Positions 32,270 through 47,639 of a DNA stretch of 64,000 nt are shown one piece after another. Position 1 is the stretch's first letter. Each line of letters starts with the position of its first letter. A program made the translations under genes and the position numbers. Location: positions 1 to 64,000 of the IMG/VR virus record IMGVR_UViG_3300031344_000002; one strand, given 5' to 3'. The notes under the pieces are model-generated. The model did not search any database and was not told the origin of the DNA. It was given only the letters and a program-made list of their open reading frames with translations.

Positions 32270-33052
32270 TTAAAATTTATTTCCTTTACTTAAATTTTCA
32301 TGCTTCCAAATTGGCTGTAAATTACATAACATATTAATAATTCTTGGGCTTGTTCCTTCTTTAAAAGCAGAAATAGGTTTTTTATGGTCAATATGCCATT
32401 CATTTCTATTATTCCATGACATACCCACTTTAAATTGACATTCAATTCTTTGAATTAATTGTTTAGGTGTATAACCAAATTCTGTTATAGTATTTATTGA
32501 ATTTTTCTTAAATCCTAATTTTTCGGTTCTATATAAAAAATTTCTCATCCATTTAATTGTAGATAATTCGAGACTTTTCTTATATCGATTTCTAGCATAT
32601 TTTCTAAACTTTTCTTTATTTTTTTTAAAATAATTATGACCATATTCATTTAATTTATTAAAATATTTAGAATAATAGTTTTTAGTATATTTATTAAGTT
32701 TATCTTTATTATTCTTATAATAATTACGACCATATTCTAAACACCTTTCCTTATTTTTATTATAATAAATTTTAGAACGTTTTCTAATTTTATTTTTATT
32801 AATTATATTATAATTTATATTATATTCTTTTATTTTTTCTTTATTTTTATTATAAAAATCTTTAAGTTTAATATAAGAACATTTTTTACAATCTGCTCTT
32901 AATCCATAAGAACCAAGTTTAGATTTATAAAATTCTGAAATATTTTTAATTTCACCACATTTACTACATTTCTTTTCTGTAATATCATTAATATCCTTTT
33001 TTATTTTAATTTTTTTTATATATTTACTAGATTTAAGTTTTCTTTTTTTCAT
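32270..33052 (-). CDS. HNH endonuclease with an N-terminal zinc finger
   Basis: KKCSKCGEIK...DCKKC; MSW.N..EWHIDHKKPIS...NLQPIW..ENLSKGNK. Confidence 0.85.
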   Translation of the reverse strand: MKKRKLKSSKYIKKIKIKKDINDITEKKCSKCGEIKNISEFYKSKLGSYGLRADCKKCSYIKLKDFYNKNKEKIKEYNINYNIINKNKIRKRSKIYYNKNKERCLEYGRNYYKNNKDKLNKYTKNYYSKYFNKLNEYGHNYFKKNKEKFRKYARNRYKKSLELSTIKWMRNFLYRTEKLGFKKNSINTITEFGYTPKQLIQRIECQFKVGMSWNNRNEWHIDHKKPISAFKEGTSPRIINMLCNLQPIWKHENLSKGNKF

Positions 33053-33571
33053 TAATCTTTATTGGTTTAATAATTCTATTAACTCTATAATATTATTACA
33101 TATTATAAAATAATATTTATAATAAATAGTAATTTCTATAAATATTATTTTTAGTTAACTAATTTTAACATTATTTAACTAAAATATTTTAATAAGGTCT
33201 TTTTTTATTGGAAAATAATTTATAACTTTGACAAGTTTTTTCATTAAACTTCTACGAAACTATTTTAGTTAATCTAATTAATCATTCAAAAACTCTTTCT
33301 TTTAAATAAAAGAACAAATTTATAATATTTATTACTAACTTCTTCGAATTTAATAAAAATTTAACAACACGGGATAGCTATGTTCAATTATTTTCATAAT
33401 TGAAATTAGTTTCATAATCATTAATTTCATTTATAAATAAAAAATATTCCACACTCAATTTTATTTTAAAAAAATATATAATTAATCTTTTATAGATTGG
33501 GATAGTTTTCACCAATGTAAAAATAGATATTATAAATTTATTCTGCAAGTATTTATTTAAAAATAATATTA

Positions 33572-36500: not shown

Positions 36501-36778
36501 ATCCAGAAGGATTTGGTATGCAACCGATGTTAGCTAAAATTACATTACAAATGAAGATAATTGGTGGTCAATCATTAGAAGGACCTATCGATGCATTACA
36601 AAATGCGGTATCATTTAATTACTATGCAAATTCAACATTTAGTAAAAATGGTATGTATGCTCGTCCTTCAAAAGTTTCATCGGCACAAACAAGTTATAAG
36701 GGTGGAGTATCAACCAATACTTCAACAACAAGTTCAAATACAGTAAATAATACATTACAAACACAAAATACAAAATAA
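33572..36778 (+). CDS. Large baseplate/tail protein containing an OmpA-like domain
   Basis: Late motif upstream; IYFPND...ITIDGGSS...YNIALGNRRIAAVKHLV...RRASI pattern; C-terminal RVGDF..TKVII..V.VDY...WD.NPEG. Confidence 0.65.
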   Translation: MADINGNSRLFLSGEQFRNQLIPRNLYNLDNEYESTDELSLRNKSKVADSIASILAVIPQYQHINPDNSLLSRIDGNTPLTEIGTRMLGQQMFYNSVSHIAQQNLPSIDFSNILKGKSPFIKNVDLTITVKDQDSSSLLDKVGGFIGKTFFNTNAIGTPDPFNPSSINTDYIKNSGKGQLAYFYDSINLNVYKQIGPDDSSDTIIKYAPKGHEIQQRVNITSNWKYFNFTEKNAYPYLYKPSGTFTPSSENYANTDERISYSDLTKSNTIQEYAPNQQFIEDNFGVINKSPIKINIENFVDDKSDITTDDIQHKLVWGRDGISSDSKGYLSSLHGDTNDEINGLNSNDSGDITKFKINGGLLEYTKNLLNASSGYLVDITRKVFTEGNKIIGFNGSPLWQAPNELNAYVVANDIVNKTGVRQHTMVDQYDRFAKAIRYMGNVVYGGNPNSVIYKSVIPKIHPEWDKSNTDLNYKNMMFSIENLAIVAIKKDDSYGTIDDEWNTPIPLSEVGPFSGRIMWFPPYDIQLNETANAKYESTVMVGRNEPMYNYMNSERTTTLSFTLLIDYPEQLRNYIGENQNKNIADFFAFGGNSIPEKKIEDLKLHLKQLQDKISQITGPTKQADVAPINVPEIKIYFPNDMPTDSQINTIIEDMYNNPLHYEIRDGCISENDGNGFGLNDSKKHGVYDVVGLSANSTNNIFVLTGTSIYSQYNVSNLNNDLNKALSDVYSNPDNRKYYDITIDGGSSKLYKGKDETAYNIALGNRRIAAVKHLVEERLKAIFKVNNVQTELGINIISNLSTGSAGSSVEGAEAKNMSLKPIKEERRASINIKKNNKSVDPKQQTVNINQQQNIKKIQDDITATELLLKQYSNPTFNTREDAILNGFESISKNNYYPAFHTQTPEDFHRRLTFLQQCTRQGSAKHFNSEVDAAGTLRARNSVFGRQPICIMRVGDFMYTKVIIENVTVDYNETTWDMNPEGFGMQPMLAKITLQMKIIGGQSLEGPIDALQNAVSFNYYANSTFSKNGMYARPSKVSSAQTSYKGGVSTNTSTTSSNTVNNTLQTQNTK

Positions 36779-37089
36779 TGCCGTACAAAGATTATGATAG
36801 ATATTCAATATTAAAAAATTCTGATGGTACAATAGACCAAATGCCATTTGTGAATTTACCTATTAATCCAAGTGATAAATATGAATATTGGAATAGTGCA
36901 TATAGTAGATTAGATAAATTATCACAAAAATATTATGGAAATCCCTTCTATGATTTTATAATACTTTATGGAAATTATATGTATACAAGTGAGTTTGATA
37001 TTCCTGATGAAACTTTAATTCGTATACCATTTCCACTTAATAAAGCAATTGCTGATTATGAGGCAATATTAACAGCATATAAAACATAA
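36778..37089 (+). CDS. Baseplate wedge/LysM-like small protein (gp53-like)
   Basis: RLDKLSQKYYGNPFY..II..N......FDIPD..LIRIP pattern. Confidence 0.7.
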   Translation: MPYKDYDRYSILKNSDGTIDQMPFVNLPINPSDKYEYWNSAYSRLDKLSQKYYGNPFYDFIILYGNYMYTSEFDIPDETLIRIPFPLNKAIADYEAILTAYKT

Positions 37090-37146
37090 AAACACTTGTC
37101 ATTCTAATTTAAATTCATTATGTTTGCAGTTATTAAAACTGTAATT

Positions 37147-37419
37147 ATGAAAACAAGTATAATAAATTATCGCCAAGTAAGTGAATCTTATTTCATAACA
37201 AAACCATTAAAATTAGGTGAATTTATAGATATTTTAAAAAATTTACCTAATGATTATACTGCTGTTGCAGTAGAAGAAATATTACAATTTAATGGATTTA
37301 ATAATACACCTTATAGCACACATTATCCAATCATTGAAATTGAAGTTAATAATGATAATAAAGAAATTAAATTTTTTACTAAAAGAGCTAAACTTACCTT
37401 AATTAATGATGAAAAATAA
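37147..37419 (+). CDS. Hypothetical protein
   Basis: Start moved to 37147 because 37119-37126 (TATGTTTG) looks like a promoter. Confidence 0.6.
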   Translation: MKTSIINYRQVSESYFITKPLKLGEFIDILKNLPNDYTAVAVEEILQFNGFNNTPYSTHYPIIEIEVNNDNKEIKFFTKRAKLTLINDEK

Positions 37420-38914
37420 AATAATAGTAGTATTTTCATCACATTTGGGAGATGAAAAAAATAATGAATTTATAAATCATATTCATAATACTATTGGTGT
37501 TAATCATGATATATTATGTTACACTAATTATAATCAATATTCTCTTACTGAAGTGTATAATAAAGCAATTGTCGATTATAATAAAGATAATGTAATTATG
37601 GTATTCTGCCATCCAGATATTATAATAAAAACAAAAAATTGGGGTAAAATATTATTAAATAAATTCAATAACACTAATTTTGATATTATTGGAGTGGCTG
37701 GTACAACTTTTCTTAATGAAAATGGCTGTTGGTGGACCGATAAAAGTAAAATGTTTGGAATAGTAGAACATACGAATGGTATTAGTACGTGGGTTAGTGA
37801 ATATTCTAAAGAAATACCCAATGTAAAAGAAGTTGTAGTTATTGATGGTGTATTTATGGCTATTGATTGTAATAATATTATACATAAATTTGATGAAGAA
37901 TTTAAAGGATTTCATTTTTATGAAATTCCAATGATTACTTCCAACTACCTCGATGGTTGTAATATAGGAGTAACTACTTCAATTAGAATTTTACATAAAT
38001 CTATAGGTATGACCAATCAAGAATGGGAAAATAATAGAATTCAATTTGCTCAAAAATATAAAGATGAATTACCATTATCATTACCACCGCAATATAAAGA
38101 TATTATTTCTAAATTAACGGTAGAGCCAAAAGTTAGTGTAATTATACCAACAAAAAATAATTTTAATTTAATTAAAAATAATATTAATTCATGGAATGAA
38201 TGTGTTAATTATGAGAATTATGAAATACTTATTGCTGATACTGGTAGTAGTCCTGATATTATTAATAGATATTCGGAGATATTAAGTAATAAAGTTAAAT
38301 TAATTCGATATGATTACTATAATTTTGGTAAAATAAATAATGATATGGTGAGAAATCATGTATCTGAAGATACTGAATTAATTTTATTTTGTAATGATGA
38401 TGTTAAATTATTAAATGATGTATTAAGTAGATGTGTCGAAATTTATAATGCAAATAAAGAAAATGTTGGTACAATTGGAATTAGATTGCATTTTGCAAAT
38501 GCTGATGTACAACATTGTGGAATTACAATTGTTAGAGATACAACCGATAATATACATTTAACGCATACTGACCTTAGAAAAGCAGATAATTATTTTACTG
38601 GTGTAAATTATAATTCATTAGGAAATACAGGAGCATTTCTATTAATTAATAAACAACTATTTATTGATATTGGATATTTTAATGAATCATATATTGAATG
38701 TTTTGAAGATGTTGAATTGAATTTGAATTGTCTCATTAAAGGTAAAAAAAATATCACAGTTTGTGATGCAGTAGCATATCATTATGAATCAATATCAAGA
38801 GATAGAAGTAATGATAAATTAGAAAAGTTAAATAGGGATTATTTTGAAAGATTACATTTATTTTATCTAAAAAATAAAGAAGTATTAAATAAAATTATTA
38901 GATTGGTTAAATAA
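37406..38914 (+). CDS. Two-domain glycosyltransferase (GT2-like)
   Basis: N-terminal VFCHPD...IDGVFM..FHFY domain; C-terminal VSVIIPTKN, LFCNDD, FEDVELNL..HYESISR. Confidence 0.85.
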   Translation: MMKNKIIVVFSSHLGDEKNNEFINHIHNTIGVNHDILCYTNYNQYSLTEVYNKAIVDYNKDNVIMVFCHPDIIIKTKNWGKILLNKFNNTNFDIIGVAGTTFLNENGCWWTDKSKMFGIVEHTNGISTWVSEYSKEIPNVKEVVVIDGVFMAIDCNNIIHKFDEEFKGFHFYEIPMITSNYLDGCNIGVTTSIRILHKSIGMTNQEWENNRIQFAQKYKDELPLSLPPQYKDIISKLTVEPKVSVIIPTKNNFNLIKNNINSWNECVNYENYEILIADTGSSPDIINRYSEILSNKVKLIRYDYYNFGKINNDMVRNHVSEDTELILFCNDDVKLLNDVLSRCVEIYNANKENVGTIGIRLHFANADVQHCGITIVRDTTDNIHLTHTDLRKADNYFTGVNYNSLGNTGAFLLINKQLFIDIGYFNESYIECFEDVELNLNCLIKGKKNITVCDAVAYHYESISRDRSNDKLEKLNRDYFERLHLFYLKNKEVLNKIIRLVK

Positions 38915-38915
38915 T

Positions 38916-39731
38916 ATGGGATTTACAAAATACGGTATATGTTATAATGTTTTTGATGGTCAAGAATTACTTGAAGATTCAATACTTCAAATAAGAGATT
39001 TAGTTGATTATATTTCTGTAGTATATCAAACAGAATCATATTGGGGAAATAAGTGTTCGGAAAATTTATTAGAAATATTAAATAGATTAAAAAATGAAGG
39101 GTTAATTGATGAATTGGTTTTTTATGAGAATCAACAAACGCTTTCACCGCATTCAAATCAAATAATTAAAAGAAATTTAGGTATTAATTTATCAAGAAAA
39201 AAATATTGTACCCATCATATGTCAATGGATTGTGATGAATTTTATGTTGAAGAACAATTCGCTAAATTATTGGCATGGTATGACGAAAATCCAAATTTTG
39301 TTGGTTTTTCAGATTACAATGATTATTATAAATCTCCTTCGTATTTAATTGATAAACAACATGATACTATGGTTAGTTTATTTTTTCCAATAAAAGGAAA
39401 TAATGTTTCATTTATACAAGACTATCCTTCACCAGTGCTTGTTGACCCAACAAGAAGACCTAATTATGATAGGTATGTTATATTTCAACCAGATATTATA
39501 CAAATGCATCATATGACATTGGTTAGAAAGAACATTGACAGTAAGATAAGAAATGCAGCAAAAAGACTTAATTATAATAATGATGCTGCAATTCAAAAAC
39601 AAATTGATTTTTATAATAATTGGAATGAAGATAATTTAGTTGGTTTAAATGAATGGGGTGATTTAAAATTAAAAAAAATCGAGCCAATAATAATACTAAA
39701 TAATTTTAATAAAAATAATATAAAATTATGA
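38916..39731 (+). CDS. Glycosyltransferase-like protein (GT-A)
   Basis: MSMDCDEFY DxD motif; paralogous to the C-terminal half of 43002..44753. Confidence 0.65.
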   Translation: MGFTKYGICYNVFDGQELLEDSILQIRDLVDYISVVYQTESYWGNKCSENLLEILNRLKNEGLIDELVFYENQQTLSPHSNQIIKRNLGINLSRKKYCTHHMSMDCDEFYVEEQFAKLLAWYDENPNFVGFSDYNDYYKSPSYLIDKQHDTMVSLFFPIKGNNVSFIQDYPSPVLVDPTRRPNYDRYVIFQPDIIQMHHMTLVRKNIDSKIRNAAKRLNYNNDAAIQKQIDFYNNWNEDNLVGLNEWGDLKLKKIEPIIILNNFNKNNIKL

Positions 39732-40363
39732 ATCCGAATGAATTAGATATACTTGCATTAAAATATGGAACAGATAAGTCATCTGAGCATCATGATTATA
39801 CTAAATTTTATAATCAATTTTTTTATTCAAATAAAAATGAAGTAAAAAATGTTTTAGAAATTGGGGTTTTTCGTGGTAATTCATTGAGAATGTGGAGAGA
39901 TTATTTTATCAATGCTATGATTTATGGCATTGATATTGATATAAATTGTAAGTTTGAGGAAGAAAGAATTAAAGTATTGATTAATGACCAAATTAATACT
40001 AATATAATCAACTTATTACCAAATAATTTTGATGTTATTATTGATGATGGCGGACATCAATCAACACAACAAATTAAATCATTTGAAATATTATTTCCAA
40101 GTGTAAAATCTGGTGGCGTATATATTGTTGAAGATGCGTGTTGTTTATATTGGTCAGAATATAATATAGGTTCAAATCAAACAGCAATAGAATATTTTAA
40201 AACATTAGTTGACCACGTAAATTTTTTTGGTAGTGTAACAAATGGTTTATATCAAAGAAATCGAGAAATTATATTGAAAAATAAAGAAAATGTAAGTTTT
40301 TTTGAAAAAAATATTGATTATATTTTATTCACAAATAGTATAATTCTCATTAAGAAAATATAA
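39728..40363 (+). CDS. SAM-dependent methyltransferase (MycE/TylE-like sugar O-methyltransferase)
   Basis: KYGTDK...H.Y...Y, VLEIGV..G.SLRMW, GIDID, DVIIDDGGH, GGVYIVED. Confidence 0.8.
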   Translation: MNPNELDILALKYGTDKSSEHHDYTKFYNQFFYSNKNEVKNVLEIGVFRGNSLRMWRDYFINAMIYGIDIDINCKFEEERIKVLINDQINTNIINLLPNNFDVIIDDGGHQSTQQIKSFEILFPSVKSGGVYIVEDACCLYWSEYNIGSNQTAIEYFKTLVDHVNFFGSVTNGLYQRNREIILKNKENVSFFEKNIDYILFTNSIILIKKI

Positions 40364-40409
40364 ATTAATTAAACGAAAAAATAAGAAATAAACTAAAAAT
40401 TAATAAAAT

Positions 40410-41117
40410 ATGATAAATAGAGAAGATGTTCAAACATTTATATTCGTGCATGACCAAAACATTATTTTATCTTATGAAGAAGAAAAAATATTTAAGAACA
40501 TTGAATATACCTATGTGTTTTTAGGTACAGGTAAAACAGACATGTTATTTAATATTAAAAATATAATCTATGCCAAGGATTTACCATATAATTTAGAAAA
40601 TTATCCAAAAATGTGTTCATATTCTGGTTGGTATGTGTTATTTAAAAATAATTTAATTACCGCCAAATATGTTAATTTATTTGAATATGATATTATATTA
40701 TCTAATGATTTTATGGATAAATTAGTATTAAATATAGATGATAAAACAGATTATTATGGTTATATACAAATAGGACTTAATAGTTGTTTTTTATATAATG
40801 AAATCCAATTTGGAGAATTAAGTAAATATTATCCTAATCTTCAACTTAATATTATAAATAAAAGTAAAGAAAAAAATATTGATGTGTGGTGTGTAACAAG
40901 TAATGTTACAATGAAAAGGGAGTTTTTTTATAAATATATGTCAGATTCAGAAGATTTTTTTTATTGGGTTAAAGCAGCACCACGTGCTGGGCATGAATTA
41001 GAAAGATGTTTATCTGTATATCACATATTAAATAATGATATAATAAATGTCAAATATTTAGATAAGGAAAACGCATTAAAACATTATTATAAGAATTCAC
41101 ATAATATTAAATATTAA
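40410..41117 (+). CDS. Putative glycosyltransferase-like protein
   Basis: LFEYDII motif, GHELER; within the glycan cluster. Confidence 0.5.
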   Translation: MINREDVQTFIFVHDQNIILSYEEEKIFKNIEYTYVFLGTGKTDMLFNIKNIIYAKDLPYNLENYPKMCSYSGWYVLFKNNLITAKYVNLFEYDIILSNDFMDKLVLNIDDKTDYYGYIQIGLNSCFLYNEIQFGELSKYYPNLQLNIINKSKEKNIDVWCVTSNVTMKREFFYKYMSDSEDFFYWVKAAPRAGHELERCLSVYHILNNDIINVKYLDKENALKHYYKNSHNIKY

Positions 41118-41118
41118 A

Positions 41119-41655
41119 ATGAAATACATAAAAAATAGAAATGAAATGCTTGCACTACTTCCGAAAAAAATAGTGATTGCAGAATTAGGTGTTTTTAGAG
41201 GGGATTATAGTCAAATAATAATAGATATTATTCAGCCAAGTCATATTTATTTGGTGGATATTTTTAATGAAGGACCATCCTTTTCGGGAGATAAAGATGG
41301 TGAAAATGCAATTACGATACCAAATTTATTTGTTGAATATGAAAATTTAATAAAAAAATATAAAAAACAAAATAATGTGAGTATTATTAGAAATACTACA
41401 ACAGATTTTTTAACGAATATTAGTTCAGATATACTTCAAGCAGTTTATATAGATGCTGACCATACTTATAATGCAGTATATAATGATTTAATTAATAGTT
41501 ATAATAAAATAAAACAATATGGTTGGATAATGGGGCATGATTTTAACGGTATGGAAGTTCAACATGCTGTTAATAGATTTTGTGCTGAAAGAAATTTAGA
41601 AATTGAGTATCTTACTCAAGATAAATGTCCGAGTTATATGATAATAAAAAAATGA
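41119..41655 (+). CDS. SAM-dependent methyltransferase (Methyltransf_24-like)
   Basis: AELGVFRGD, YLVD, VYIDADHTY..V..D, G.IMGHDF. Confidence 0.85.
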   Translation: MKYIKNRNEMLALLPKKIVIAELGVFRGDYSQIIIDIIQPSHIYLVDIFNEGPSFSGDKDGENAITIPNLFVEYENLIKKYKKQNNVSIIRNTTTDFLTNISSDILQAVYIDADHTYNAVYNDLINSYNKIKQYGWIMGHDFNGMEVQHAVNRFCAERNLEIEYLTQDKCPSYMIIKK

Positions 41656-42287
41656 ATAAAAATATTTTTATAGAAATTGTTAGACCATATACAATGACAA
41701 GTGTCGAAAGAATTATTGCATTATTTGATTCTTTAGAATATATTAGAAAAAATAAAATTTCTGGTGATATTGTAGAATGCGGTGTATGGAAGGGAGGAAA
41801 TATTCTTGGAATAATAGAGTATTTAAATTATTATGAAATTTATGATAAAAATGTGTGGTTATATGACACATTTAATGGAATGACACAACCCGAAGAAATA
41901 GATATGGATTACTTCAATAGAAAGGCTATTGATATATTTCAATCAATACTATGTGTTTCATTAATTGATGAAGTTAAAAAGAATTTATCTATTTCGAAAT
42001 ATCCCAACGAAAAAATAAAATATATTATCGGGGATGTTGAAAAAACGTTAAATAATGAAATAAATTTACCAAATCAAATATCATTATTGAGATTAGATAC
42101 TGATTTTTATAAATCAACAAAAAAAGAATTAAATGTATTATTCCCAATATTATCCAAAAATGGTGTTTTAATTGTTGATGATTATGGTTATTGGCAAGGT
42201 TCTAAAAAAGCGGTTGATGAATACTTTAATGAATTTACATTAATTGAGCATATTGATGATACTGGAATAAAAATAATTAAAGAATGA
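41625..42287 (+). CDS. TylF/MycF-family sugar O-methyltransferase
   Basis: TMTS.ER, GDIVECGVWKGG, YDTFNGM, LLRLDTDFYKST, DDYGYWQG.KKAVDEY. True start is probably the internal MNKN. Confidence 0.9.
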   Translation: MSELYDNKKMNKNIFIEIVRPYTMTSVERIIALFDSLEYIRKNKISGDIVECGVWKGGNILGIIEYLNYYEIYDKNVWLYDTFNGMTQPEEIDMDYFNRKAIDIFQSILCVSLIDEVKKNLSISKYPNEKIKYIIGDVEKTLNNEINLPNQISLLRLDTDFYKSTKKELNVLFPILSKNGVLIVDDYGYWQGSKKAVDEYFNEFTLIEHIDDTGIKIIKE

Positions 42288-42955
42288 AAACATATTTAAT
42301 ATTTTTTTGCGATAAAAAATATGAAAAGAGAGAATCATATTTTTTAGTTGAATTAAAAAATATTGGTTTTGATAATATATTTTGTTATAGAAAAGAATGG
42401 TTATTAACTACTAATTTTTATGTAGAAAATAAAGAAATATTAGATATGCCAAGGGGGGCAGGATATTGGTTATGGAAACCATACATTATTATTGAAATGT
42501 TAAAGAAGATTGAAGAAGGTGATATTGTTTTTTATATGGATGCTGGTGATAGTATAAATAATTATAATATTATAAATATAATAAAAAACCATATGGTTGA
42601 TAATGATTATATGATTGCTGGTACATCTAAATGGGGATTGAATAAATATTGGACAAAAAAAGATTGTTTTGTTTTAATGGAATGTGATAATGAAATATAT
42701 CATAATGTTCCTCAAATTGAGGCAGGTACATTAGTTTTTAAAAAAACAAAAAAAAATGAAGATTTTTTAAATGAATGGTTATATTATTGTAAAAACAAAA
42801 GTATTTTAACTGATGTTTCAAATACTTTGGGTAATAATTATGATGGATTTAATGACCATAGGCATGACCAAAGTATTTTAACTAATTTAATAATAAAATA
42901 TAATATGAAACATAGTGATATATTATATTCATATATAAATTATAATAGTTATTAA
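42284..42955 (+). CDS. Putative glycosyltransferase (GT-A)
   Basis: GAGYWLWKPYII, FYMDAG, HRHDQSILT motifs. Confidence 0.7.
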   Translation: MKTYLIFFCDKKYEKRESYFLVELKNIGFDNIFCYRKEWLLTTNFYVENKEILDMPRGAGYWLWKPYIIIEMLKKIEEGDIVFYMDAGDSINNYNIINIIKNHMVDNDYMIAGTSKWGLNKYWTKKDCFVLMECDNEIYHNVPQIEAGTLVFKKTKKNEDFLNEWLYYCKNKSILTDVSNTLGNNYDGFNDHRHDQSILTNLIIKYNMKHSDILYSYINYNSY

Positions 42956-43001
42956 CTATAGAATTATAATAAGCATTATATTAAGGTAAAAAAAATTAGA
43001 A

Positions 43002-44753
43002 ATGAATAATGATATTACAAGACCCGATATTAGATTATCTAATGATGAACGTACTAAATTAAGGGGTGGTAATTCTCATAATATCCAAGATTCGAAAAAA
43101 ACATTAAAACCATTTATCCAATTACCTAATTGTCCATTGGAGTGTATTATCACACGACAAATTAAAGATAATCCTTTTGAAGCAGTAAGAACAATGATAT
43201 TATCTAAATATCAAAATCAATTTAAATATAATAACACATTAGTTATTTTAGGTTATAATATAGATTTTAATATTTTAGAATATCGAGAAAAATATCCAAA
43301 TTATAAAATCGTTATATATCAATTAGAACAACTTTATGATAATAAAAGTCAATGGTATGATATAAATAATAAAAATGGAGCAGTTGTTAATAGAACAAAA
43401 CACATACAAAAATCATTAAGCGAATGTGATGAAATTTGGGATTATGATTTAGATAATATTAATTTTTTAAAAGCAGAGGGATTTAATAATATAATACACG
43501 TTCCTTTGGAATATACAGAGGATTTAATTAAAATAAATAATATTATAAATCCAAAATATGAATTATTATTTTTAGGTTCTGTTAACGATAAGAGAGCAAA
43601 AATATTATCATTATTATGTGATAAATATAATATTTGTATACTTGCTCCAGAAGTTGATTGTAGTAAATATAAAAATTATAATTTTGGAAAATGTATGAAT
43701 CCTTCAGCATTTGGCGATGATTTATATGAATATGTTTTTAATTCAAAAATTATTATTAATTTACATTATTATGAATCTTGTTTACAAGAACAAGTTAGAC
43801 TTTTTGAATTATTAATAAATGGAAGAGTAATTGTATCAGAAAAATCTATAAGAAATTATTTTGGTAATTTAATATATGAATTTGATGATGAAAAAGATAT
43901 GTTTAAAAAAATTTATTTTTTATTGAAAAATAATATATGGAAAAATAATAGTATATCGAAAAAATTTAAAAATAAGGAATATAAAAGATTTAGAGTCGGT
44001 ATTGCGTATAATACCTTTTATGGTTTAGAATTGATTGAAAAATCAATAAAATCTATAAAAAACTATGCTGATTATATCATTATAGTTCACCAAAAAATTG
44101 GATTTAATGGAAGTCCTGAACCAGAAGAAAATAAACAAATTTTAAAGCATTTAATAGATAATAAATTGGTTGATGATGTTGTTTATTATGATAATAATGA
44201 TAATGATATAGAACGTGGGGTTTTAAATAAAAGGAATATTGGTTTAGATTATTGTAAAAAAAATGGTTGCACATTTATAATGCCAATGGATTCAGATGAG
44301 CGATATAATGTGAACGAATTAATTACTGAAATTAATTTCATGTACGATAATAATATAGATACATTATATTCTCCAATTTATTCGTATTATTATGATGAAA
44401 ATTATTATTTTAAAGATACATATTTTGTTGCGAGTGTATTTAAAATTGATAATAGAAGATTTGAAGTTATTAAATCTTCTGTATTAGTAGACCATGTTAG
44501 AAAAATGAATGAAGGTACATATAAAATATCTGAAATGTATATGCATCATTATACATATTTAAAAAATTCTTTTTCGATTAAAATAAATAATAGTGTAGCA
44601 TCAACAACAGATGATTCATATATAACTATTGGTATGAAAAAAATACGTGATTATTTAATGTCATGGTCAGAAGGTGATGAAGCACTTGTATTTATAAACG
44701 ATATAATAAATAATGGAATAATACTTACAAAAGTAAATTTATTAAAAAAATAA
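43002..44753 (+). CDS. Two-domain glycosyltransferase-like fusion
   Basis: N-terminal GT-B-like part (LLFLGSVN.KR, KIIINLH..E.VRLF.LL..G..IVSE); C-terminal MPMDSDERY domain. Confidence 0.7.
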   Translation: MNNDITRPDIRLSNDERTKLRGGNSHNIQDSKKTLKPFIQLPNCPLECIITRQIKDNPFEAVRTMILSKYQNQFKYNNTLVILGYNIDFNILEYREKYPNYKIVIYQLEQLYDNKSQWYDINNKNGAVVNRTKHIQKSLSECDEIWDYDLDNINFLKAEGFNNIIHVPLEYTEDLIKINNIINPKYELLFLGSVNDKRAKILSLLCDKYNICILAPEVDCSKYKNYNFGKCMNPSAFGDDLYEYVFNSKIIINLHYYESCLQEQVRLFELLINGRVIVSEKSIRNYFGNLIYEFDDEKDMFKKIYFLLKNNIWKNNSISKKFKNKEYKRFRVGIAYNTFYGLELIEKSIKSIKNYADYIIIVHQKIGFNGSPEPEENKQILKHLIDNKLVDDVVYYDNNDNDIERGVLNKRNIGLDYCKKNGCTFIMPMDSDERYNVNELITEINFMYDNNIDTLYSPIYSYYYDENYYFKDTYFVASVFKIDNRRFEVIKSSVLVDHVRKMNEGTYKISEMYMHHYTYLKNSFSIKINNSVASTTDDSYITIGMKKIRDYLMSWSEGDEALVFINDIINNGIILTKVNLLKK

Positions 44754-44815
44754 TGTAATTATTTTGATATTTATGAAAGAAATTAACTTTAAATTATAAT
44801 AAAATTTTAATTAAT

Positions 44816-46231
44816 ATGGTGGGTATATTAATAGTTAATTTAAATAATCTTGAATTAACAAAAAATTGTATTGATTCTTTAAAAAAACAAATAAATCAAG
44901 AATTTAGAATATATTTATTTGACCAAAATTCTAATGAACAAGGTACTTTTGAATATTTAAATGAATGTGAAAACAATAATATGTTTGTTTATAGAAATTC
45001 AGAAAATGTTCCACTTAATTATATTTGGAATAATTTTAAATATATTTGTGGTTATGAATATTTATGCTTTTTAAATAATGATATTGTGGTATCAAATACA
45101 TTTGTTGATGATATTATTAAAATATTTATTAACGAACCAACAGTTGGTGTAGTAATTCATGTAACAAATAATAATGATTATATAAAATCAAAAAATAATC
45201 TTGAATATGCAATATTTAATAATAATAATAATGTATTATATCAAGGATGGGATTTTGCGATTAGAAATAGTATAATTCCTGATATTCCAAAACAGTTAAC
45301 AATTTTTGGTGGGGATGATTATATTTTTGCTAAAATAAGTTCGCAGGGTTATAAAGTTGCGATGGCATTTAGTTCACCAATTATTCATTTTAAAGCAAAA
45401 ACTAGAGTAAAAATAATTAATATTGGTGAAATTCAAAGAAATGATGGAATTGCTTATGCAGAATTATTTAGAACTGAAAATCTTACATCACTATGTGCAA
45501 CCATTCATAATGGTATTTGCAGTGCAACACCAGAACCAAATATGAAATTAATACAAAATAAAAATTGTGTTTTTACTGCATTTATAGGGGATTATGATTT
45601 GCCATTATCAACCACGCATACAAAACTTCCTGATTGGGATTATATTTGTTTTACTGATAATAAAGAAATTAAATCAGATTTTTGGAGAGTAATATATATC
45701 GAAAATAATCATAATAATTTCCTTTATAATATTAAATTAGGGAAATATTTTAAAACAAATTTTTATAAATATTTATTGAGTTATGAAAATTTATTATGGT
45801 TGGATGAAAGAATTACTATTACCAATAATATAAATAATTATCTTAATTATCTTAATTATAAAGATATTGTTTTTTTAAAACATCCAGACACATTAAATAT
45901 TTTAGAGGAATTTGAGAGAGTTATTAACAGTAAGAGAGAATCTACCAAAATGGTTGATATTATTCGAAATCGTTATGCGGAATTAGGATATGATTATAGT
46001 AATGGTTTGATTTCATCTGGAGTTATTTTATTTAAAAATAATGAAAAAACAATAAAATTTTTTAAGGAATGGTGGAATGAAATCGAACATTACTCAAGTA
46101 GTGACCAATTATCTGCAAATTTTGTATTGTGGAAAAATCCTGAATTAAATTATGTTATGTTAAGTGGAATTTTAAATAATCAAGATTTTATGCGACAGCC
46201 AAGAACTACACAAGTATTTAAACATGAGTGA
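44816..46231 (+). CDS. GT2 plus DUF616-like glycosyltransferase fusion
   Basis: CFLNNDIVV, FGGDDY; second domain CVFTAFIGDYD, WDYICFTD, KHP, SSDQLS.NFVLW. Confidence 0.8.
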   Translation: MVGILIVNLNNLELTKNCIDSLKKQINQEFRIYLFDQNSNEQGTFEYLNECENNNMFVYRNSENVPLNYIWNNFKYICGYEYLCFLNNDIVVSNTFVDDIIKIFINEPTVGVVIHVTNNNDYIKSKNNLEYAIFNNNNNVLYQGWDFAIRNSIIPDIPKQLTIFGGDDYIFAKISSQGYKVAMAFSSPIIHFKAKTRVKIINIGEIQRNDGIAYAELFRTENLTSLCATIHNGICSATPEPNMKLIQNKNCVFTAFIGDYDLPLSTTHTKLPDWDYICFTDNKEIKSDFWRVIYIENNHNNFLYNIKLGKYFKTNFYKYLLSYENLLWLDERITITNNINNYLNYLNYKDIVFLKHPDTLNILEEFERVINSKRESTKMVDIIRNRYAELGYDYSNGLISSGVILFKNNEKTIKFFKEWWNEIEHYSSSDQLSANFVLWKNPELNYVMLSGILNNQDFMRQPRTTQVFKHE

Positions 46232-46958
46232 ATTATTTTATAAAAAGGAATTTGATTATTTTTTAAATAAAATAAAACTTAATCAACATTTTAAATATTC
46301 AAGATATAATGATGGTGAATTAATCGCAATAATTGGAAATTCTCCAAATTCTACCAATTGTGATGGTCATCAATATTTTCCTAAAATGTCTATTGAGTTA
46401 AGACAGACATTGCTGAGTTATAAATATAATGAAGATTATGTTTTAGAATCTTTTGATTATTGGTATAATTTATTACCACATGTCAAAAATATACTTAATG
46501 AATTAAAGCTAATAAATTCTGAACTTACCTTTTTACATACAGATTTTATTAGAATTGCTCATGAACAGAATCCTGAACAATTTATACAATTATTAGAAAC
46601 ATTAAAAACAAAAAAACTTATAATTGTCGGTCCTTTTTATCTTAAGGAATTATGTAGATTTTTTAATTTTACGTATGTTGAAGTATTATTAAAAAATTGT
46701 TATTTGGATAAGGATAATATTATTAAAGAAATTATAAAAATTAATAACTTATCCAATGATAATTATTATTTGTTTAGCGCAAGTATGCCAACAAAAGTTA
46801 TTATTGATGTATTTAAAGAAGATAATAAGAATACATATTTAGATTGGGGAAGTGTTTGGGACACATTTTTTATATCACCACAATATAGTTTTATTAGAAA
46901 ACGCTCAACATCAAACCATAATAAATATTTGGAAATATATAAAGATTATTTAATATAA
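46224..46958 (+). CDS. GT-D-fold-like protein
   Basis: YSRYNDGEL..I, IIVGP, LFSASMPTKV, YLDWGS..D pattern. Confidence 0.55.
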   Translation: MSELFYKKEFDYFLNKIKLNQHFKYSRYNDGELIAIIGNSPNSTNCDGHQYFPKMSIELRQTLLSYKYNEDYVLESFDYWYNLLPHVKNILNELKLINSELTFLHTDFIRIAHEQNPEQFIQLLETLKTKKLIIVGPFYLKELCRFFNFTYVEVLLKNCYLDKDNIIKEIIKINNLSNDNYYLFSASMPTKVIIDVFKEDNKNTYLDWGSVWDTFFISPQYSFIRKRSTSNHNKYLEIYKDYLI

Positions 46959-47003
46959 AAGACAATTATTTTACTAAAGTATTTATTATTAAAAAATTAG
47001 AAT

Positions 47004-47639
47004 ATGAAAATCGCTAATGTTATTTTTGAAAAAGAATTAGTAAATCATACAAAGGTTGATTATATAAATTATTATAATGAACCTATTATATATGATACAT
47101 TAGACAAAACTATACCAACATTATATGTGGGTTGGTCATTTATGAAAGCAAGCAATCCCGATAATCTTATAATTCAAAATGCGGATATTCTTAAAAAGAG
47201 AATTATAAGTAATGAACTATATTGGGAATGTAATTTTGAAGAAGGTAAGGCATCCCATGTTAAAGGAGTGGATTCTTTTGTAAATTTTGCTCCACAATTG
47301 TATTTTACACCAAAATATTCTTATGTTAACTTAGACCCAATTTTTTTCCAATTAAAAGATGTTCAAGACATCATGGATGTTCTTCCTAAAAACATTAAAG
47401 CAAGTTATAATTTCAGAAACGAAATGATATATTTATTATGTGATAATAATATATATGGTATAAATTTAAACATGTTTCAGTTTTTCCTATTTAATATAGA
47501 AGCGATTAAAAATAGTTTGTCATTAAGAACAATAACAACATATGATGATATTGATGGTAGCATATATCAATCATATTATAAATTATTTCCAAATTTTACT
47601 TTTCTTAAAAGATATCTTGTTGTGATATTGTCAAAATAG
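47004..47639 (+). CDS. Hypothetical protein
   Basis: Late motif at 46978. Confidence 0.75.
   Translation: MKIANVIFEKELVNHTKVDYINYYNEPIIYDTLDKTIPTLYVGWSFMKASNPDNLIIQNADILKKRIISNELYWECNFEEGKASHVKGVDSFVNFAPQLYFTPKYSYVNLDPIFFQLKDVQDIMDVLPKNIKASYNFRNEMIYLLCDNNIYGINLNMFQFFLFNIEAIKNSLSLRTITTYDDIDGSIYQSYYKLFPNFTFLKRYLVVILSK

What the first reader, a model, noticed from the sequence alone, without database searches (positions are those of the whole stretch)
37406..46958. 9.5-kb glycan synthesis and O-methylation island in a phage
Seen: ten consecutive co-oriented genes, made up of about seven glycosyltransferase-like ORFs (three are two-domain fusions) and three different SAM methyltransferases (MycE-like, Methyltransf_24-like, TylF/MycF-like). 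They sit between baseplate genes and probable head genes. No sugar-nucleotide synthesis or export genes are visible. Established: MycE and MycF O-methylate sugar hydroxyls, and chlorovirus PBCV-1 builds a methyl-capped capsid glycan with its own enzymes. Inference: an autonomous pathway decorating the virion (or DNA, or the host surface) with a methyl-capped oligosaccharide.
Basis: partly seen in the sequence, partly recalled or inferred. Interest (0 to 1): 0.62.

Follow-up and report, generated by a model that had tools for sequence, protein, structure and literature searches.

The report
Variable glycan-building cassette in jumbo phage
Ten neighbouring genes of an uncultured giant tailed phage from rhizosphere soil encode sugar-adding and sugar-methylating enzymes; they sit in a tail-baseplate operon at a spot where related phages carry different sets of such genes, so these phages probably build a strain-specific methylated sugar chain, most likely on the virus particle.

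Summary
37406-46958 is ten tightly packed, co-oriented ORFs. Seven are glycosyltransferase-like, with ten GT-like domains and three two-domain fusions. Three are sugar O-methyltransferase-like: a MycE/TylE catalytic domain, a Methyltransf_24 protein and a TylF/NovP/MycF protein. Fold work placed three of the four ORFs that Pfam left blank: g4 and g7 are GT-A, g10 is GT-D (DUF1792, Z 16.9). The fourth, g2, rests only on paralogy to the C-terminal half of g8.

New here is the locus architecture. The window is the start of a 218-kb record of a distant T4-like jumbo myophage found in rhizosphere and peat metagenomes. Gene g1 is a conserved anchor that follows a baseplate-hub-type block. Between g1 and the next conserved gene, relatives carry at least seven different cassettes, and some carry none. 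All cassettes consist of GTs, methyltransferases or sugar-nucleotide enzymes, and modules are shuffled between them.

A promoter-like motif that heads the sheath, tube and baseplate genes precedes u2. Its next intergenic copy follows g10.

None of the ten proteins has a membrane segment. No sugar-nucleotide, export or hydroxymethyl-base genes were found.

Best reading (0.45): a late, cytoplasmic pathway that uses host sugars and decorates a virion protein, probably in the tail. The acceptor is unproven. The "head genes" downstream are not supported.

The parts
28237..29163 (+). T4 baseplate-family gene, headed by the promoter-like motif
   Evidence: PF12322 T4_baseplate at 33.1 bits, cut-off 24.5. 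Motif lies 41 nt upstream.
29739..32267 (+). u4, a tape-measure-like protein: N-terminal coiled coil, then a Gly/Ala-rich hydrophobic part
   Evidence: Judged by composition only (52 hydrophobic windows). No family hit. Conserved in relatives at 34-85% identity. Motif lies 24 nt upstream.
32270..33052 (-). u3, a Lys-rich ORF with a C-terminal HNH-like motif; probably a homing endonuclease inserted between u4 and u2
   Evidence: Sequence inspection. Present in only some relatives.
33549..33556 (+). Promoter-like motif GTATTTAT, 16 nt before the u2 start; probable start of the transcription unit that includes the island
   Evidence: The same motif sits before the u2 homologues of relatives.
33572..36778 (+). 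u2, a conserved 1068-aa protein of unknown fold that always precedes the anchor; candidate tail or hub component
   Evidence: 35-75% identity in relatives, always upstream of u1a and g1. No family, PHROG, GenBank-phage or Atlas-structure match.
36778..37089 (+). u1a, a conserved 103-aa protein directly after u2
   Evidence: 49-84% identity in relatives. No family hit.
37120..37419 (+). u1b, a 99-aa ORF that overlaps the g1 start by 14 nt; not seen in relatives
37406..38914 (+). g1, the conserved anchor: two-domain glycosyltransferase (Glyco_tranf_2_5 + GT2); proposed priming or core enzyme
   Evidence: Found in 32 viral contigs at 35-91% identity. The N-terminal domain is the part kept in every relative. 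The GT2 domain keeps D-T-G-S, N-D-D and F-E-D-V-E invariant.
38916..39731 (+). g2, a GT-A-like protein, paralogue of the C-terminal half of g8
   Evidence: invariant M-D-x-D-E. 94% identical in the L021 group. No family or PDB hit of its own.
39728..40363 (+). g3, a sugar O-methyltransferase-like protein: MycE/TylE catalytic domain without their N-terminal domain
   Evidence: 3ssm at E 2.6e-22 and 8ia9 at E 2.5e-18, aligned to residues 183-336 of 419. Methyltransf_24 at 27.2 bits.
40410..41117 (+). g4, a GT-A fold glycosyltransferase-like protein (Glyco_tranf_2_5 / DUF4422-like)
   Evidence: ESM Atlas structure search: TM 0.88 and 0.73. No Pfam or PDB sequence hit.
41119..41655 (+). g5, a class I SAM methyltransferase (Methyltransf_24, weakly TylF-like)
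   Evidence: E 1.7e-10; TylF E 1e-4. No PDB sequence hit.
41625..42287 (+). g6, a TylF-family sugar O-methyltransferase
   Evidence: TylF at 126.9 bits. NovP, MycF and CalS11 matches.
42284..42955 (+). g7, a GT-A fold glycosyltransferase of the retaining type (GT8/GT34/GT6-like); member of a large family that has no Pfam model
   Evidence: 682 homologues, none with a Pfam hit. Model at pLDDT 96. Foldseek matches. D86 is invariant and D89 nearly invariant, forming a D-A-G-D motif.
43002..44753 (+). g8, a two-domain protein: GT-B-half-like (Glyco_trans_1_2) plus a GT-A-like domain
   Evidence: Sub-threshold hits. In the closest relatives the homologue (87% identity) carries a fused methyltransferase domain.
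44816..46231 (+). g9, a two-domain glycosyltransferase (GT2 + Nucleotid_trans/TOD1_MUCI70)
   Evidence: 60-62% identical full-length homologues sit next to g10 homologues in L060 and L061.
46224..46958 (+). g10, a GT-D fold (DUF1792-like) glycosyltransferase with a conserved D-x-E motif
   Evidence: R27, N29 and G31 are invariant; D30 and E32 are nearly invariant.
46979..46986 (+). Next intergenic copy of the promoter-like motif, 18 nt before d1; marks the downstream end of the unit
   Evidence: Conserved before the d1 homologues in L021 and L069.
47004..47639 (+). d1, the first conserved gene downstream; in some relatives it follows g1 directly
   Evidence: L028-L031, L044. (L069).

Best explanation
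The island is the variable part of a dedicated glycan-synthesis locus in the tail/baseplate-hub operon of a distant T4-like jumbo phage.

The ten proteins are soluble cytoplasmic enzymes. They take nucleotide sugars and SAM from the host.

The conserved two-domain enzyme g1 lays down the first one or two sugars on a phage-specified acceptor. Interchangeable modules then extend the chain: g2 with g8, g4, g7, and g9 with g10. Three O-methyltransferases (g3, g5, g6) methylate sugar hydroxyls, probably as caps.

The acceptor is most likely a virion protein made at the same time, probably a tail or baseplate component. The result would be a strain-specific methylated oligosaccharide on the particle.

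Shown: the enzyme families and folds, the conserved-anchor/variable-cassette architecture, the lack of membrane, export and sugar-nucleotide genes, and the position of the promoter-like motif.

Inferred: co-transcription, late timing, the order of the enzymatic steps and the acceptor.
For: Enzyme set.

No hydrophobic segment in any of the ten proteins. That fits sequential glycosylation in the cytoplasm without a lipid carrier.

Anchor and cassette:
- g1 is found in 32 viral contigs. It always follows the u2 and u1a homologues where those are detectable.
- In L028-L031 and L044 it is followed directly by d1-d5.
- At 91% identity to the closest relatives, g1 is more conserved than u2 (75%), d1 (72%) or the sheath (86%).

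Seven different cassettes at the same site, all glycan-related. Modules are shared in a mosaic way: g2+g8 with L021, g9+g10 with L060/L061, g7 with L069.

In L021 the g8 homologue is fused to a g3-like methyltransferase. This ties the GT and MT steps to one product.

Timing:
- The motif (A)GTATTTAT(A/T) occurs 25 times in the window against 12.7 +/- 3.8 expected.
- In the 218 kb, 44 of 67 copies are intergenic and 39 lie within 80 nt upstream of a same-strand start.
- It heads the sheath, tube, T4_baseplate, u4, u2 and gp25-like genes. It does not head the UvsX, DnaB, exonuclease, helicase or DNA polymerase genes.
- One copy precedes u2. The next intergenic copy precedes d1. The same layout is seen in relatives.
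- No terminator excess within the island.

Further GT genes lie in structural context: a GT-A-like gene sits between the gp25-like and gp6-like baseplate genes.

Precedents: mycobacteriophage capsid and tail-tube glycosylation (as cited in PMC12619734) and PBCV-1 A064R/A061L (PMC9614988).
Against: - No acceptor is identified.
- The Ser/Thr-rich C-terminal tail of u2 ties for the richest window in the genome. It is not conserved in relatives, so it gives no support.
- That the motif is a late promoter is inferred only from the genes it heads. It also heads a homing-endonuclease gene.
- No RNA data exist.
- u2 and u1a have no recognisable fold or family, so 'tail protein' is inferred from position alone.
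- GT-rich clusters of T4-like cyanophages are usually read as host cell-wall modification (PMC12801897).
- The PBCV-1 glycan genes are expressed early (PMC9614988), so late timing is not a rule.
- Soluble GTs can also act on lipid-linked acceptors at the inner face of the membrane.
Confidence: 0.45

Rival explanations
1. Host-envelope remodelling. The enzymes extend or cap host lipid-linked intermediates (LPS/LOS core, O-antigen, capsule, teichoic acid) during infection. They rely on the host's priming transferase, flippase and ligase. The purpose would be to change the cell surface, for example to block superinfection or adsorption of progeny to lysing cells.
For: The domain repertoire is that of bacterial surface-polysaccharide loci: GT2, Glyco_tranf_2_5 (seen in Acinetobacter LOS outer-core loci, PMC4172580), and GT9-like, GT11, GT25, DegT, acyltransferase and ACP genes in relatives. 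Hypervariable cassettes between conserved flanks are the hallmark of O-antigen and capsule loci. Authors of cyanomyovirus genomes favour this reading for their GT clusters (PMC12801897).
Against: No priming phosphoglycosyltransferase, flippase, polymerase, ligase or any membrane protein is present. The island shares a transcription unit and a promoter-like motif with tail genes rather than with early or host-takeover genes. The phage is a large lytic-type myovirus. I made no search for lysogeny genes and saw none in the ORFs I scanned. A late surface change would have little time to act.
Confidence: 0.25
2. Another cytoplasmic target. The pathway glycosylates a host or phage non-structural protein (for example to disarm a defence or receptor protein), or makes a free methylated oligosaccharide, glycolipid or small-molecule glycoside.
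For: MycE, MycF, TylF and NovP act on small-molecule glycosides. All ten enzymes are soluble. Nothing in the sequence fixes the acceptor.
Against: No aglycone-synthesis genes (PKS, NRPS, terpene) are present in the island. The anchor keeps its place next to u2 and u1a across relatives as distant as 47% g1 identity. That argues for a phage-encoded, conserved acceptor.
Confidence: 0.12
3. DNA hypermodification. The GTs build a glycan on a hydroxymethylated base of the phage DNA, as T4 and the MT/5mYOX- or ThyS-linked GT clusters do.
For: The phage is distantly T4-like (sheath 34-38% identical to T4-like cyanophage sheaths). UvsX and helicase genes lie 8-12 kb downstream, and in T4 the beta-glucosyltransferase gene lies near uvsX (my own knowledge). 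GT-A and GT-B enzymes can glycosylate DNA (bioRxiv 10.1101/2023.12.21.572611).
Against: No Tet/JBP dioxygenase match in 218 kb. The only thymidylate-synthase-family gene is 35 kb away and keeps the P-F-N-I asparagine that specifies dUMP (residue rule from my own knowledge). Known DNA-GT clusters sit within about 10 kb of such enzymes. The promoter-like motif is that of structural genes, not replication genes. Ten GT domains and three sugar O-methyltransferases far exceed known DNA glycans. Caveat: the record is only 66% complete.
Confidence: 0.05
4. No single pathway. The site is just a recombination hot spot where unrelated accessory genes pile up, and the ten genes do not cooperate.
For: The region is mosaic. 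Its GC is lower than the genome average, 22.7% against 26.3%. The spacer between u1a and g1 also holds unrelated genes in relatives: KilA-N and a methyltransferase.
Against: Nearly every gene with a family hit in all seven cassettes examined is glycan-related. The rest have no annotation. GT and MT domains are fused in relatives. Genes overlap or abut, as in operons.
Confidence: 0.05

Closest known systems
Chlorovirus PBCV-1 capsid N-glycan machinery (A064R three-domain GT-GT-MT, A061L methyltransferase, A111/114R three-domain GT)
   Same: Virus-encoded soluble multi-domain GTs plus two successive sugar O-methyltransferases that cap a terminal sugar (PMC9614988). The g7 model matches the A064R domain 1 structure 2p72 (E 5e-5, TM 0.45-0.50). 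GT-MT fusions occur in relatives.
   Different: The host here is a bacterium and the virus a tailed phage. There is no sequence-level homology. PBCV-1 also makes some nucleotide sugars, and its genes are early and scattered. Here the genes form one cassette in a tail operon, and the glycan and acceptor are unknown.
Megavirinae (Mimivirus) fibril glycosylation gene clusters
   Same: Clustered GTs, methyltransferase and sugar-modifying genes whose content is clade-specific (PMC10117803, PMC9614988). GT-D-like domains related to g10 occur in giant-virus multi-domain proteins (Homavirus, Moumouvirus).
   Different: Those clusters include full nucleotide-sugar pathways and serve capsid fibrils of amoeba viruses. 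Variation there is between clades. Here it occurs even between phages with 91% identical anchors.
Mycobacteriophage virion glycosylation (Che8, Corndog, Myrna; Freeman et al. 2023)
   Same: Phage-encoded GTs that glycosylate capsid and tail-tube subunits (as summarised in PMC12619734). This is the only experimentally shown case of phage self-glycosylation that I could cite.
   Different: Those are small siphoviruses of Actinobacteria with two to four GT genes. I could not read the primary paper. No homology was tested. The acceptor C-terminal tails have no conserved counterpart here.
GT-rich 'cell-wall synthesis and modification' clusters of T4-like cyanomyoviruses (S-SCSM2R with 13 GTs, S-SCSM1, P-SSM2)
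   Same: Distantly related T4-like myoviruses with clustered GT genes of several families. Function untested (PMC12801897).
   Different: Those clusters include epimerases and Kdo genes and are read as host-surface genes. No conserved anchor, cassette replacement or sugar O-methyltransferase trio is described. No DNA or protein similarity to GenBank phages was found for this island beyond weak GT2 hits.
Cytoplasmic O-glycosylation of streptococcal serine-rich repeat adhesins (GtfA/B, dGT1/GtfC DUF1792, GlyD/GlyE)
   Same: A lipid-free, sequential, cytoplasmic pathway made of soluble GT-D, GT8-like and GT2 enzymes, several of them two-domain. g10 matches dGT1-type DUF1792. g7 also matches GlyE 5gvw. 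This is the closest mechanistic analogue for how the island may work (pathway knowledge is my own).
   Different: No GtfA/B-type priming pair, no serine-rich repeat acceptor and no accessory Sec system here. Methylation is not part of that pathway.
MycE/MycF, TylE/TylF, NovP, CalS11 sugar O-methyltransferases of antibiotic pathways
   Same: g3 aligns to the MycE and TylE catalytic domains. g6 aligns to NovP, MycF and CalS11. MycE and MycF act in succession on 2'- and 3'-hydroxyls of one deoxyhexose (my own knowledge).
   Different: g3 lacks the ~180-residue N-terminal domain of MycE. There are no macrolide or aminocoumarin genes here. The substrate sugar is unknown.
Bacterial O-antigen, capsule and LOS outer-core loci
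   Same: A fixed chromosomal site between conserved flanks holds alternative, mosaic sets of GT, modification and sugar-nucleotide genes (PMC4172580 for the Acinetobacter OC locus, which also contains Glyco_tranf_2_5 genes).
   Different: Those loci contain or depend on membrane steps (priming transferase, Wzx/Wzy or ABC transporter, ligase). Here the locus lies in a phage tail operon and encodes soluble proteins only.

Membership tests
GT2 / GT-A glycosyltransferases (Pfam Glycos_transf_2, Glyco_tranf_2_5) | Profile match above the curated cut-off | tested here: met
   g1: PF13712 at 82.9 bits (cut-off 27) and PF00535 at 38.1 bits (cut-off 23.3). g9: PF00535 at 34.7 bits. Not met for g8 (21.2 bits) and g2 (no hit).
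GT2 / GT-A glycosyltransferases (Pfam Glycos_transf_2, Glyco_tranf_2_5) | Conserved nucleotide-sugar and metal-binding motifs (D-x-x-S type, DXD, ED) | tested here: met
   The g1 GT2 domain keeps D43-T-G-S46, N95-D-D97 and F198-E-D-V-E202 invariant across 7 relatives. The g2/g8C family keeps M-D-x-D-E invariant. g7 keeps D86 invariant and D89 nearly invariant. The reading of these motifs is from my own knowledge.
GT2 / GT-A glycosyltransferases (Pfam Glycos_transf_2, Glyco_tranf_2_5) | GT-A fold of the ORFs without a Pfam hit | tested here: met
   g7: 92 PDB matches at E <= 0.001, the listed ones nearly all GT-A enzymes. g4: Atlas TM 0.88 to Glyco_tranf_2_5 and 0.73 to DUF4422. g2 is inconclusive: hhalign against the g1 GT2 domain gave probability 0.1%, and the PDB profile search returned only spurious repeat hits.
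GT-D glycosyltransferases (DUF1792, dGT1 type) | GT-D fold | tested here: met
   g10 model at pLDDT 92. Foldseek top three are 4pfx, 4phr and 5v4a at E 2e-7 to 3e-7. VIA-align gives Z 16.9, rmsd 3.5 over 209 residues to 5v4a. Next come the TagA/TarA fold at Z about 9, then Z 4.1 or less.
GT-D glycosyltransferases (DUF1792, dGT1 type) | N-terminal D-x-E metal-binding motif | tested here: met
   R27, N29 and G31 are invariant, and D30 and E32 nearly invariant, in 28 homologues. Equivalence to the DXE of dGT1 is from my own knowledge and was not checked by superposition.
GT-D glycosyltransferases (DUF1792, dGT1 type) | Pfam DUF1792 profile match | tested here: not met
   No Pfam hit even at E 10. 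16-18% identity in the structural alignments. So g10 is a fold-level relative, not a sequence-family member.
TylF-family sugar O-methyltransferases | Profile match and similarity to solved members | tested here: met
   g6: PF05711 at 126.9 bits over model positions 68-258 of 264. NovP at E 6e-23, MycF at E 8e-16.
TylF-family sugar O-methyltransferases | Metal-dependent O-methylation of a sugar hydroxyl | not testable with these tools
   g6 contains L-D-T-D and V-D-D motifs at the places where NovP and MycF bind the metal (sequence; assignment from memory). The activity needs an assay.
MycE/TylE sugar 2'-O-methyltransferases | Catalytic domain similarity | tested here: met
   g3 residues 5-148 align to MycE 183-336 at E 2.6e-22. 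g3 residues 5-196 align to TylE 158-368 at E 2.5e-18.
MycE/TylE sugar 2'-O-methyltransferases | N-terminal auxiliary domain of about 180 residues (full architecture) | tested here: not met
   g3 is 211 aa and aligns only to the C-terminal half of the 419-aa and 397-aa enzymes.
Virus-encoded virion glycosylation systems (PBCV-1, Megavirinae, mycobacteriophages) | Virus-encoded GTs, with or without MTs, clustered in the viral genome | tested here: met
   The record carries sheath, tube and gp25- and gp6-like genes.
Virus-encoded virion glycosylation systems (PBCV-1, Megavirinae, mycobacteriophages) | Glycan demonstrated on a virion protein | not testable with these tools
   The phage is uncultured and no proteomic data exist. 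Only context evidence is available: a shared promoter-like motif and operon with tail genes.
Phage DNA-glycosylation clusters (T4 a/b-GT; MT/5mYOX- or ThyS-linked GTs) | Enzyme that makes a hydroxymethylated base (dCMP/dUMP hydroxymethylase or Tet/JBP dioxygenase) in the genome, usually within about 10 kb | tested here: not met
   No PF12851 match. The single PF00303 gene, at 1176-2243, is 35 kb away and has the dUMP-type P-F-N-I motif. Only 66% of the genome is available.
Bacterial surface-polysaccharide (O-antigen / capsule) loci | Membrane steps: priming phosphoglycosyltransferase, flippase or ABC transporter, polymerase or ligase | tested here: not met
   None of the ten proteins has a hydrophobic 19-residue window above 1.6; the maximum is 1.28. 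No such families among the hits.
Bacterial surface-polysaccharide (O-antigen / capsule) loci | Alternative gene sets at one site between conserved flanks | tested here: met
   Seven cassette types plus an empty state lie between the g1 anchor and d1.

The most novel reading that the evidence does not exclude
A clade of uncultured ~220-365-kb T4-like jumbo phages from soil and wetland habitats carries, inside its baseplate-hub operon, an O-antigen-like 'serotype' locus. A conserved priming glycosyltransferase is followed by freely exchanged cassettes of GTs, sugar O-methyltransferases and, in some members, whole nucleotide-sugar pathways. The cassettes give each strain its own methyl-capped glycan on the tail or baseplate. 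Under diversifying selection, that glycan would take part in host recognition or in hiding structural proteins from host defences. This would be the first glycan-typing locus of a bacterial virus particle.
Probability: 0.3. Interest if true: 0.78.

Novelty: new variant of a known kind. Interest (0 to 1): 0.56.

Why it matters
Self-glycosylation of virus particles is established for chloroviruses, mimiviruses and a few mycobacteriophages. Whether it is common in phages, and what it does, is open.

This locus offers a defined, testable system:
- one conserved enzyme (g1) beside conserved candidate acceptors (u2, u1a);
- a natural series of cassettes, from empty to more than 14 kb, that should give graded glycans.

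If the glycan is on the tail, it would add a carbohydrate layer to phage-host recognition and to evasion of defences that sense structural proteins. It would also mean that phage 'serotypes' can evolve by cassette exchange, as bacterial O-antigens do.

The island also gives functions to large protein families that lack annotation. The g7 family has 682 homologues and no Pfam model. The g10 family is a sequence-divergent GT-D. It also supplies compact soluble sugar O-methyltransferases that may be useful for glyco-engineering.

If the product turns out to be host-surface remodelling, the locus is ordinary in kind but still unusually modular.

Tried and rejected
- **Nearest cultured relatives.** Megablast of the island against 50,697 GenBank phages found nothing. 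tblastn of g1 found only weak GT2-domain hits. u2, u4 and d5 had no hits, and d4 had only a 53-residue stretch in huge-phage records.
- **g6 as bait in viral contigs.** No relative found.
- **PDB sequence or profile searches for g2, g4, g7, g10 and g5.** Nothing meaningful. The pentatricopeptide-repeat hits have no single passing stretch, so I treat them as spurious.
- **hhalign of the g2/g8C family against the g1 GT2 domain.** Probability 0.1%. The GT-A label for g2 and g8C therefore stays tentative.
- **u2 as acceptor through its Ser/Thr-rich C-terminus.** Its richest 30-residue window is 50% S+T, against a genome mean of 11.5%. The tail is not conserved in 11 homologues. Dropped as evidence.
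- **ESM Atlas for u2.** No model and no named cluster.
- **Gp23 and Baseplate_J family searches in the genome.** Nothing found. The Gp23 control also rang nowhere, so that result says nothing.
- **Sigma-70 promoter and terminator scan.** No more hits than in shuffled sequence.
- **Expression.** No RNA run holds the stretch.
- **Contigs of four rhizosphere runs laid on 39400-45399** (6,000 bases). Identical pieces occur in all four runs, and in X2 there are also variants 87-90% identical. The two joints rest on single contigs with short sides, so I do not take them as rearrangements.
- **Link to the 'moraphage' lineage (PMC12619734).** Considered, but it could not be tested without their sequences. 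Their genomes reach 307 kb, whereas complete relatives here are 266-365 kb.
- **Genetic code.** No alternative code was needed.

Full report
**What the window is**

The window is the first 64 kb of a 218,381-bp IMG/VR virus record that CheckV rates 66% complete. Its G+C content is about 26%.

It is a contractile-tailed phage. It has:
- a 921-aa tail sheath at 13974-16739 (phrog_23, E 1.5e-64);
- a weakly gp19-like tube gene at 16895-17386;
- a T4_baseplate-family gene at 28237-29163 (PF12322, above cut-off);
- outside the window, a gp25-like gene at 96464-96862 and a gp6-like gene at 97620-99470.

The sheath is 34-38% identical to those of T4-like cyanophages and of a 484-kb uncultured phage. 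No cultured phage is close. Complete relatives measure 266-365 kb.

The DNA occurs nearly unchanged in at least six rhizosphere metagenome runs from different studies, and more weakly in a peat run.

**The observation**

Ten + strand ORFs fill 37406-46958, with junctions from a 31-base overlap to a 62-base gap. I call them g1 to g10.

Pfam placed six of them:

| ORF | Pfam result |
|---|---|
| g1 | Glyco_tranf_2_5 + GT2 |
| g3 | Methyltransf_24, weak |
| g5 | Methyltransf_24 |
| g6 | TylF, E 1e-36 |
| g8 | GT2, just under cut-off |
| g9 | GT2 + Nucleotid_trans/TOD1_MUCI70 |

The N-terminal half of g8 gives a weak Glyco_trans_1_2 hit.

g3 matches the catalytic domains of MycE and TylE (E 2.6e-22 and 2.5e-18). 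g6 matches NovP, MycF and CalS11.

Four ORFs had no Pfam, NCBIfam or PDB sequence hit. I took them further.
- **g2** is a paralogue of the C-terminal half of g8 and keeps an invariant M-D-x-D-E motif.
- **g4** has an Atlas model that superposes on Glyco_tranf_2_5 and DUF4422 proteins (TM 0.88 and 0.73).
- **g7** belongs to a family of at least 682 unannotated proteins. Its model (pLDDT 96) matches retaining GT-A enzymes, including domain 1 of PBCV-1 A064R.
- **g10** has 73 unannotated homologues. Its model (pLDDT 92) matches only the three DUF1792 GT-D structures by Foldseek. An independent aligner gives Z 16.9. A conserved D-x-E motif is present.

The labels for g2 and g8 are the least secure, because a profile-profile comparison with the g1 GT2 domain was negative.

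**The surroundings**

Upstream lie, in order:
- the T4_baseplate-family gene;
- an 842-aa protein with the look of a tape measure (coiled coil, then Gly/Ala-rich hydrophobic stretches);
- an HNH-like ORF on the other strand;
- u2 (1068 aa) and u1a (103 aa), neither of which matches anything annotated.

This resembles the T4 hub cluster (genes 51-27-28-29-48-54, from my own knowledge). "Baseplate genes" upstream is therefore reasonable.

Downstream lie five clade-specific genes, d1-d5. Then come a UvsX-like recombinase, an exonuclease and a DnaB-like helicase. Nothing identifies head genes, and no Gp23-family match was obtained (uninformative control).

**The locus in relatives: the main new finding**

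g1 has relatives on 32 viral contigs at 35-91% identity. Wherever the flanks are recognisable, the order is u4-like, u2-like, u1a-like, g1-like.

In one group (L028-L031, L044), g1 is followed at once by d1-d5. Everywhere else a cassette lies between them, and its content differs from group to group:

| Relative | Cassette content |
|---|---|
| L021 group (closest, g1 91% identical) | g2 and g8 homologues (94% and 87%). The g8 homologue is fused to a g3-like methyltransferase. Then a GT9-like gene, a Glyco_trans_1_2 gene, an FkbM methyltransferase and a Methyltransf_11 gene |
| L025 | GNAT, three GT2-type genes, a DegT aminotransferase, a GT9-like gene and a methyltransferase |
| L060 and L061 | g9 and g10 homologues (60-74% identity), with GT11, FkbM, DegT, hexapeptide acyltransferase, ACP, an AMP-binding enzyme, KAS III and 4,6-dehydratase-type genes |
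| L069 and a further contig | The g7 homologue, with GT25, GT11 and methyltransferases. On the further contig also a dehydratase, a 2-epimerase, a kinase, a cupin and a cytidylyltransferase |

g10 is absent from three complete relatives.

In some relatives the anchor's second domain is Glyco_transf_4 instead of GT2. The constant element is therefore the Glyco_tranf_2_5 domain.

g1 is better conserved than its structural neighbours: 91% against 72-86%.

The locus is thus a dedicated glycan site with a conserved first enzyme and mosaic, exchangeable later enzymes.

**Transcription signals**

The octamer GTATTTAT, usually preceded by A and followed by A or T, is twice as frequent in the window as in shuffled sequence. 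It occurs 25 times against 12.7 +/- 3.8, and none of 100 shuffles reached 25.

In the 218 kb, 44 of 67 copies are intergenic, although only about 10% of the DNA is intergenic. Thirty-nine copies lie within 80 nt upstream of a start codon on the same strand, mostly 9-25 nt away.

The motif heads the sheath, tube, T4_baseplate, u4, u2, gp25-like, d1 and d5 genes. It does not head the genes for UvsX, the exonuclease, DnaB, a helicase or the DNA polymerase. It is rare in the small-gene region beyond 130 kb.

One copy lies 16 nt before u2. The next intergenic copy lies 18 nt before d1. The two copies in between are inside g1 and g8. Relatives show the same layout. There is no terminator excess.

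I infer that u2, u1a and the island form one unit, transcribed with the structural genes. This is an inference from sequence, because no RNA run holds the phage.

**What the island lacks**

- No protein has a membrane-type segment.
- No Epimerase/dehydratase or nucleotidyltransferase family member is found in the 218 kb.
- No Epimerase family member is found in three complete relatives. This sub-clade must therefore use host nucleotide sugars.
- No Tet/JBP dioxygenase is found.
- The one thymidylate-synthase-family gene keeps the asparagine typical of true dUMP enzymes.

**Mechanism**

My preferred reading is a lipid-free, sequential, cytoplasmic glycosylation of a phage protein.
1. g1 primes the acceptor.
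2. The exchangeable GTs extend the chain.
3. The MycE-like, Methyltransf_24 and TylF-type enzymes methylate hydroxyls, probably on a terminal sugar. MycE and MycF do this on one deoxyhexose, and A064R-D3 and A061L do it on the terminal rhamnose of PBCV-1 (PMC9614988).

The closest working analogue is the streptococcal serine-rich-repeat adhesin pathway. It too uses soluble GT-D, GT8-like and GT2 enzymes, several of them fused.

Four observations point to a virion component, probably of the tail:
- the fixed position next to u2 and u1a;
- the shared promoter-like motif;
- the strong conservation of g1;
- further GT genes inside the baseplate block.

The acceptor remains unproven. My one concrete lead, the Ser/Thr-rich end of u2, failed the conservation test. 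I give this explanation 0.45.

**Rivals**

- **Host-envelope remodelling (0.25).** It fits the O-antigen-like repertoire and variability, and it is the usual reading of cyanophage GT clusters (PMC12801897). It does not fit the lack of any membrane step or the structural-gene context.
- **Another soluble target or product (0.12).** It cannot be excluded.
- **DNA hypermodification (0.05).** It lacks its precursor enzymes and its usual clustering (bioRxiv 10.1101/2023.12.21.572611). The missing third of the genome is a caveat.
- **A mere accessory-gene hot spot (0.05).** This is contradicted by the uniformly glycan-related content and by the GT-MT fusions.

**Novelty**

Virus-encoded glycan machinery is known in chloroviruses, Megavirinae and mycobacteriophages. 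GT clusters are known in T4-like cyanophages, and GTs were noted in another aquatic jumbo-phage lineage (PMC12619734). The kind is therefore known.

Four things are new:
- a conserved anchor with at least seven exchangeable cassettes, plus an empty state;
- its place inside a baseplate-hub operon of an uncultured soil and wetland jumbo-phage clade;
- a trio of sugar O-methyltransferases;
- a sequence-divergent GT-D enzyme, whose fold relatives also occur unannotated in giant viruses and other phages.

I rate it a new variant of a known kind, with interest 0.56.

**Limits**

- The phage is uncultured, so there is no expression or protein data.
- The record is incomplete.
- g2 and g8 are assigned on weak evidence.
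- All statements about donor sugars, order of action and acceptor are inference.

Noticed in passing
window 48639-49091 and 49104-51806: d3 is 150 aa, with an HExxH motif and a weak Peptidase_M78 hit. d4 is an acidic 900-aa protein with a DUF5661 stretch. The two share a ~27-residue N-terminus ending L-N-E (48% identity). No other protein of the genome has it. It could be a common targeting or propeptide segment, for example for packaging into the head and cleavage by a T4-type prohead protease. That is speculation.
   Followed up: partly
whole record; window copies at 5551, 8226(-), 11130(-), 13706(-), 13900, 16842, 28189, 29708, 33549, 46979, 47650, 52022, 53489: A promoter-like motif, (A)GTATTTAT(A/T), lies 9-25 nt upstream of many start codons. 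It is enriched before structural genes and nearly absent from the small-gene region beyond 130 kb. It differs from the T4 late promoter TATAAATA.
   Followed up: yes
G000:96865-97611 (outside the window; locus L065:12865-13611): A GT-A-like gene (Glyco_transf_7C at 24.9 bits) sits between the gp25-like and gp6-like baseplate wedge genes. It is conserved (74% identity) only in the closest complete relative. A further PHROG 'glycosyltransferase' lies at G000:92458-93846. A weak GT2 hit lies at window 24999-25823 (-).
   Followed up: partly
window 11672-13681 (-), 17463-19046 (+), 32270-33052 (-): Two large homing-endonuclease genes (phrog_3339, E 1e-137 or better) flank the sheath and tube genes. 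A smaller HNH-like ORF splits the tape-measure-like gene from u2. Together they indicate heavy endonuclease invasion of the tail module.
   Followed up: no
window 1176-2243 (-): A thymidylate-synthase-family gene of 355 aa (PF00303, E 1.4e-88). It has an insertion of roughly 60 residues relative to typical ThyA and keeps the dUMP-type asparagine.
   Followed up: partly
window 37406-46958: The island has lower G+C (22.7%) than the genome (26.3%), the sheath gene (31.9%) or u2 (27.2%). This is consistent with exchange among AT-rich relatives or with weaker codon selection.
   Followed up: no
window 39400-45399 in runs X2, X5, X6, X7: Independent rhizosphere metagenomes hold identical pieces of the island. 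Run X2 also holds variants 87-90% identical over g4/g5 and g8, which indicates co-existing strains. Assemblies break repeatedly inside the island.
   Followed up: partly
window 61721-62830 and 62834 onward (to G000:65674): Two Ser/Thr-rich proteins of 369 and 946 aa lie downstream of the helicase gene. The larger one has a window that is 50% S+T. They may be fibre-like proteins and further candidate glycan acceptors.
   Followed up: no
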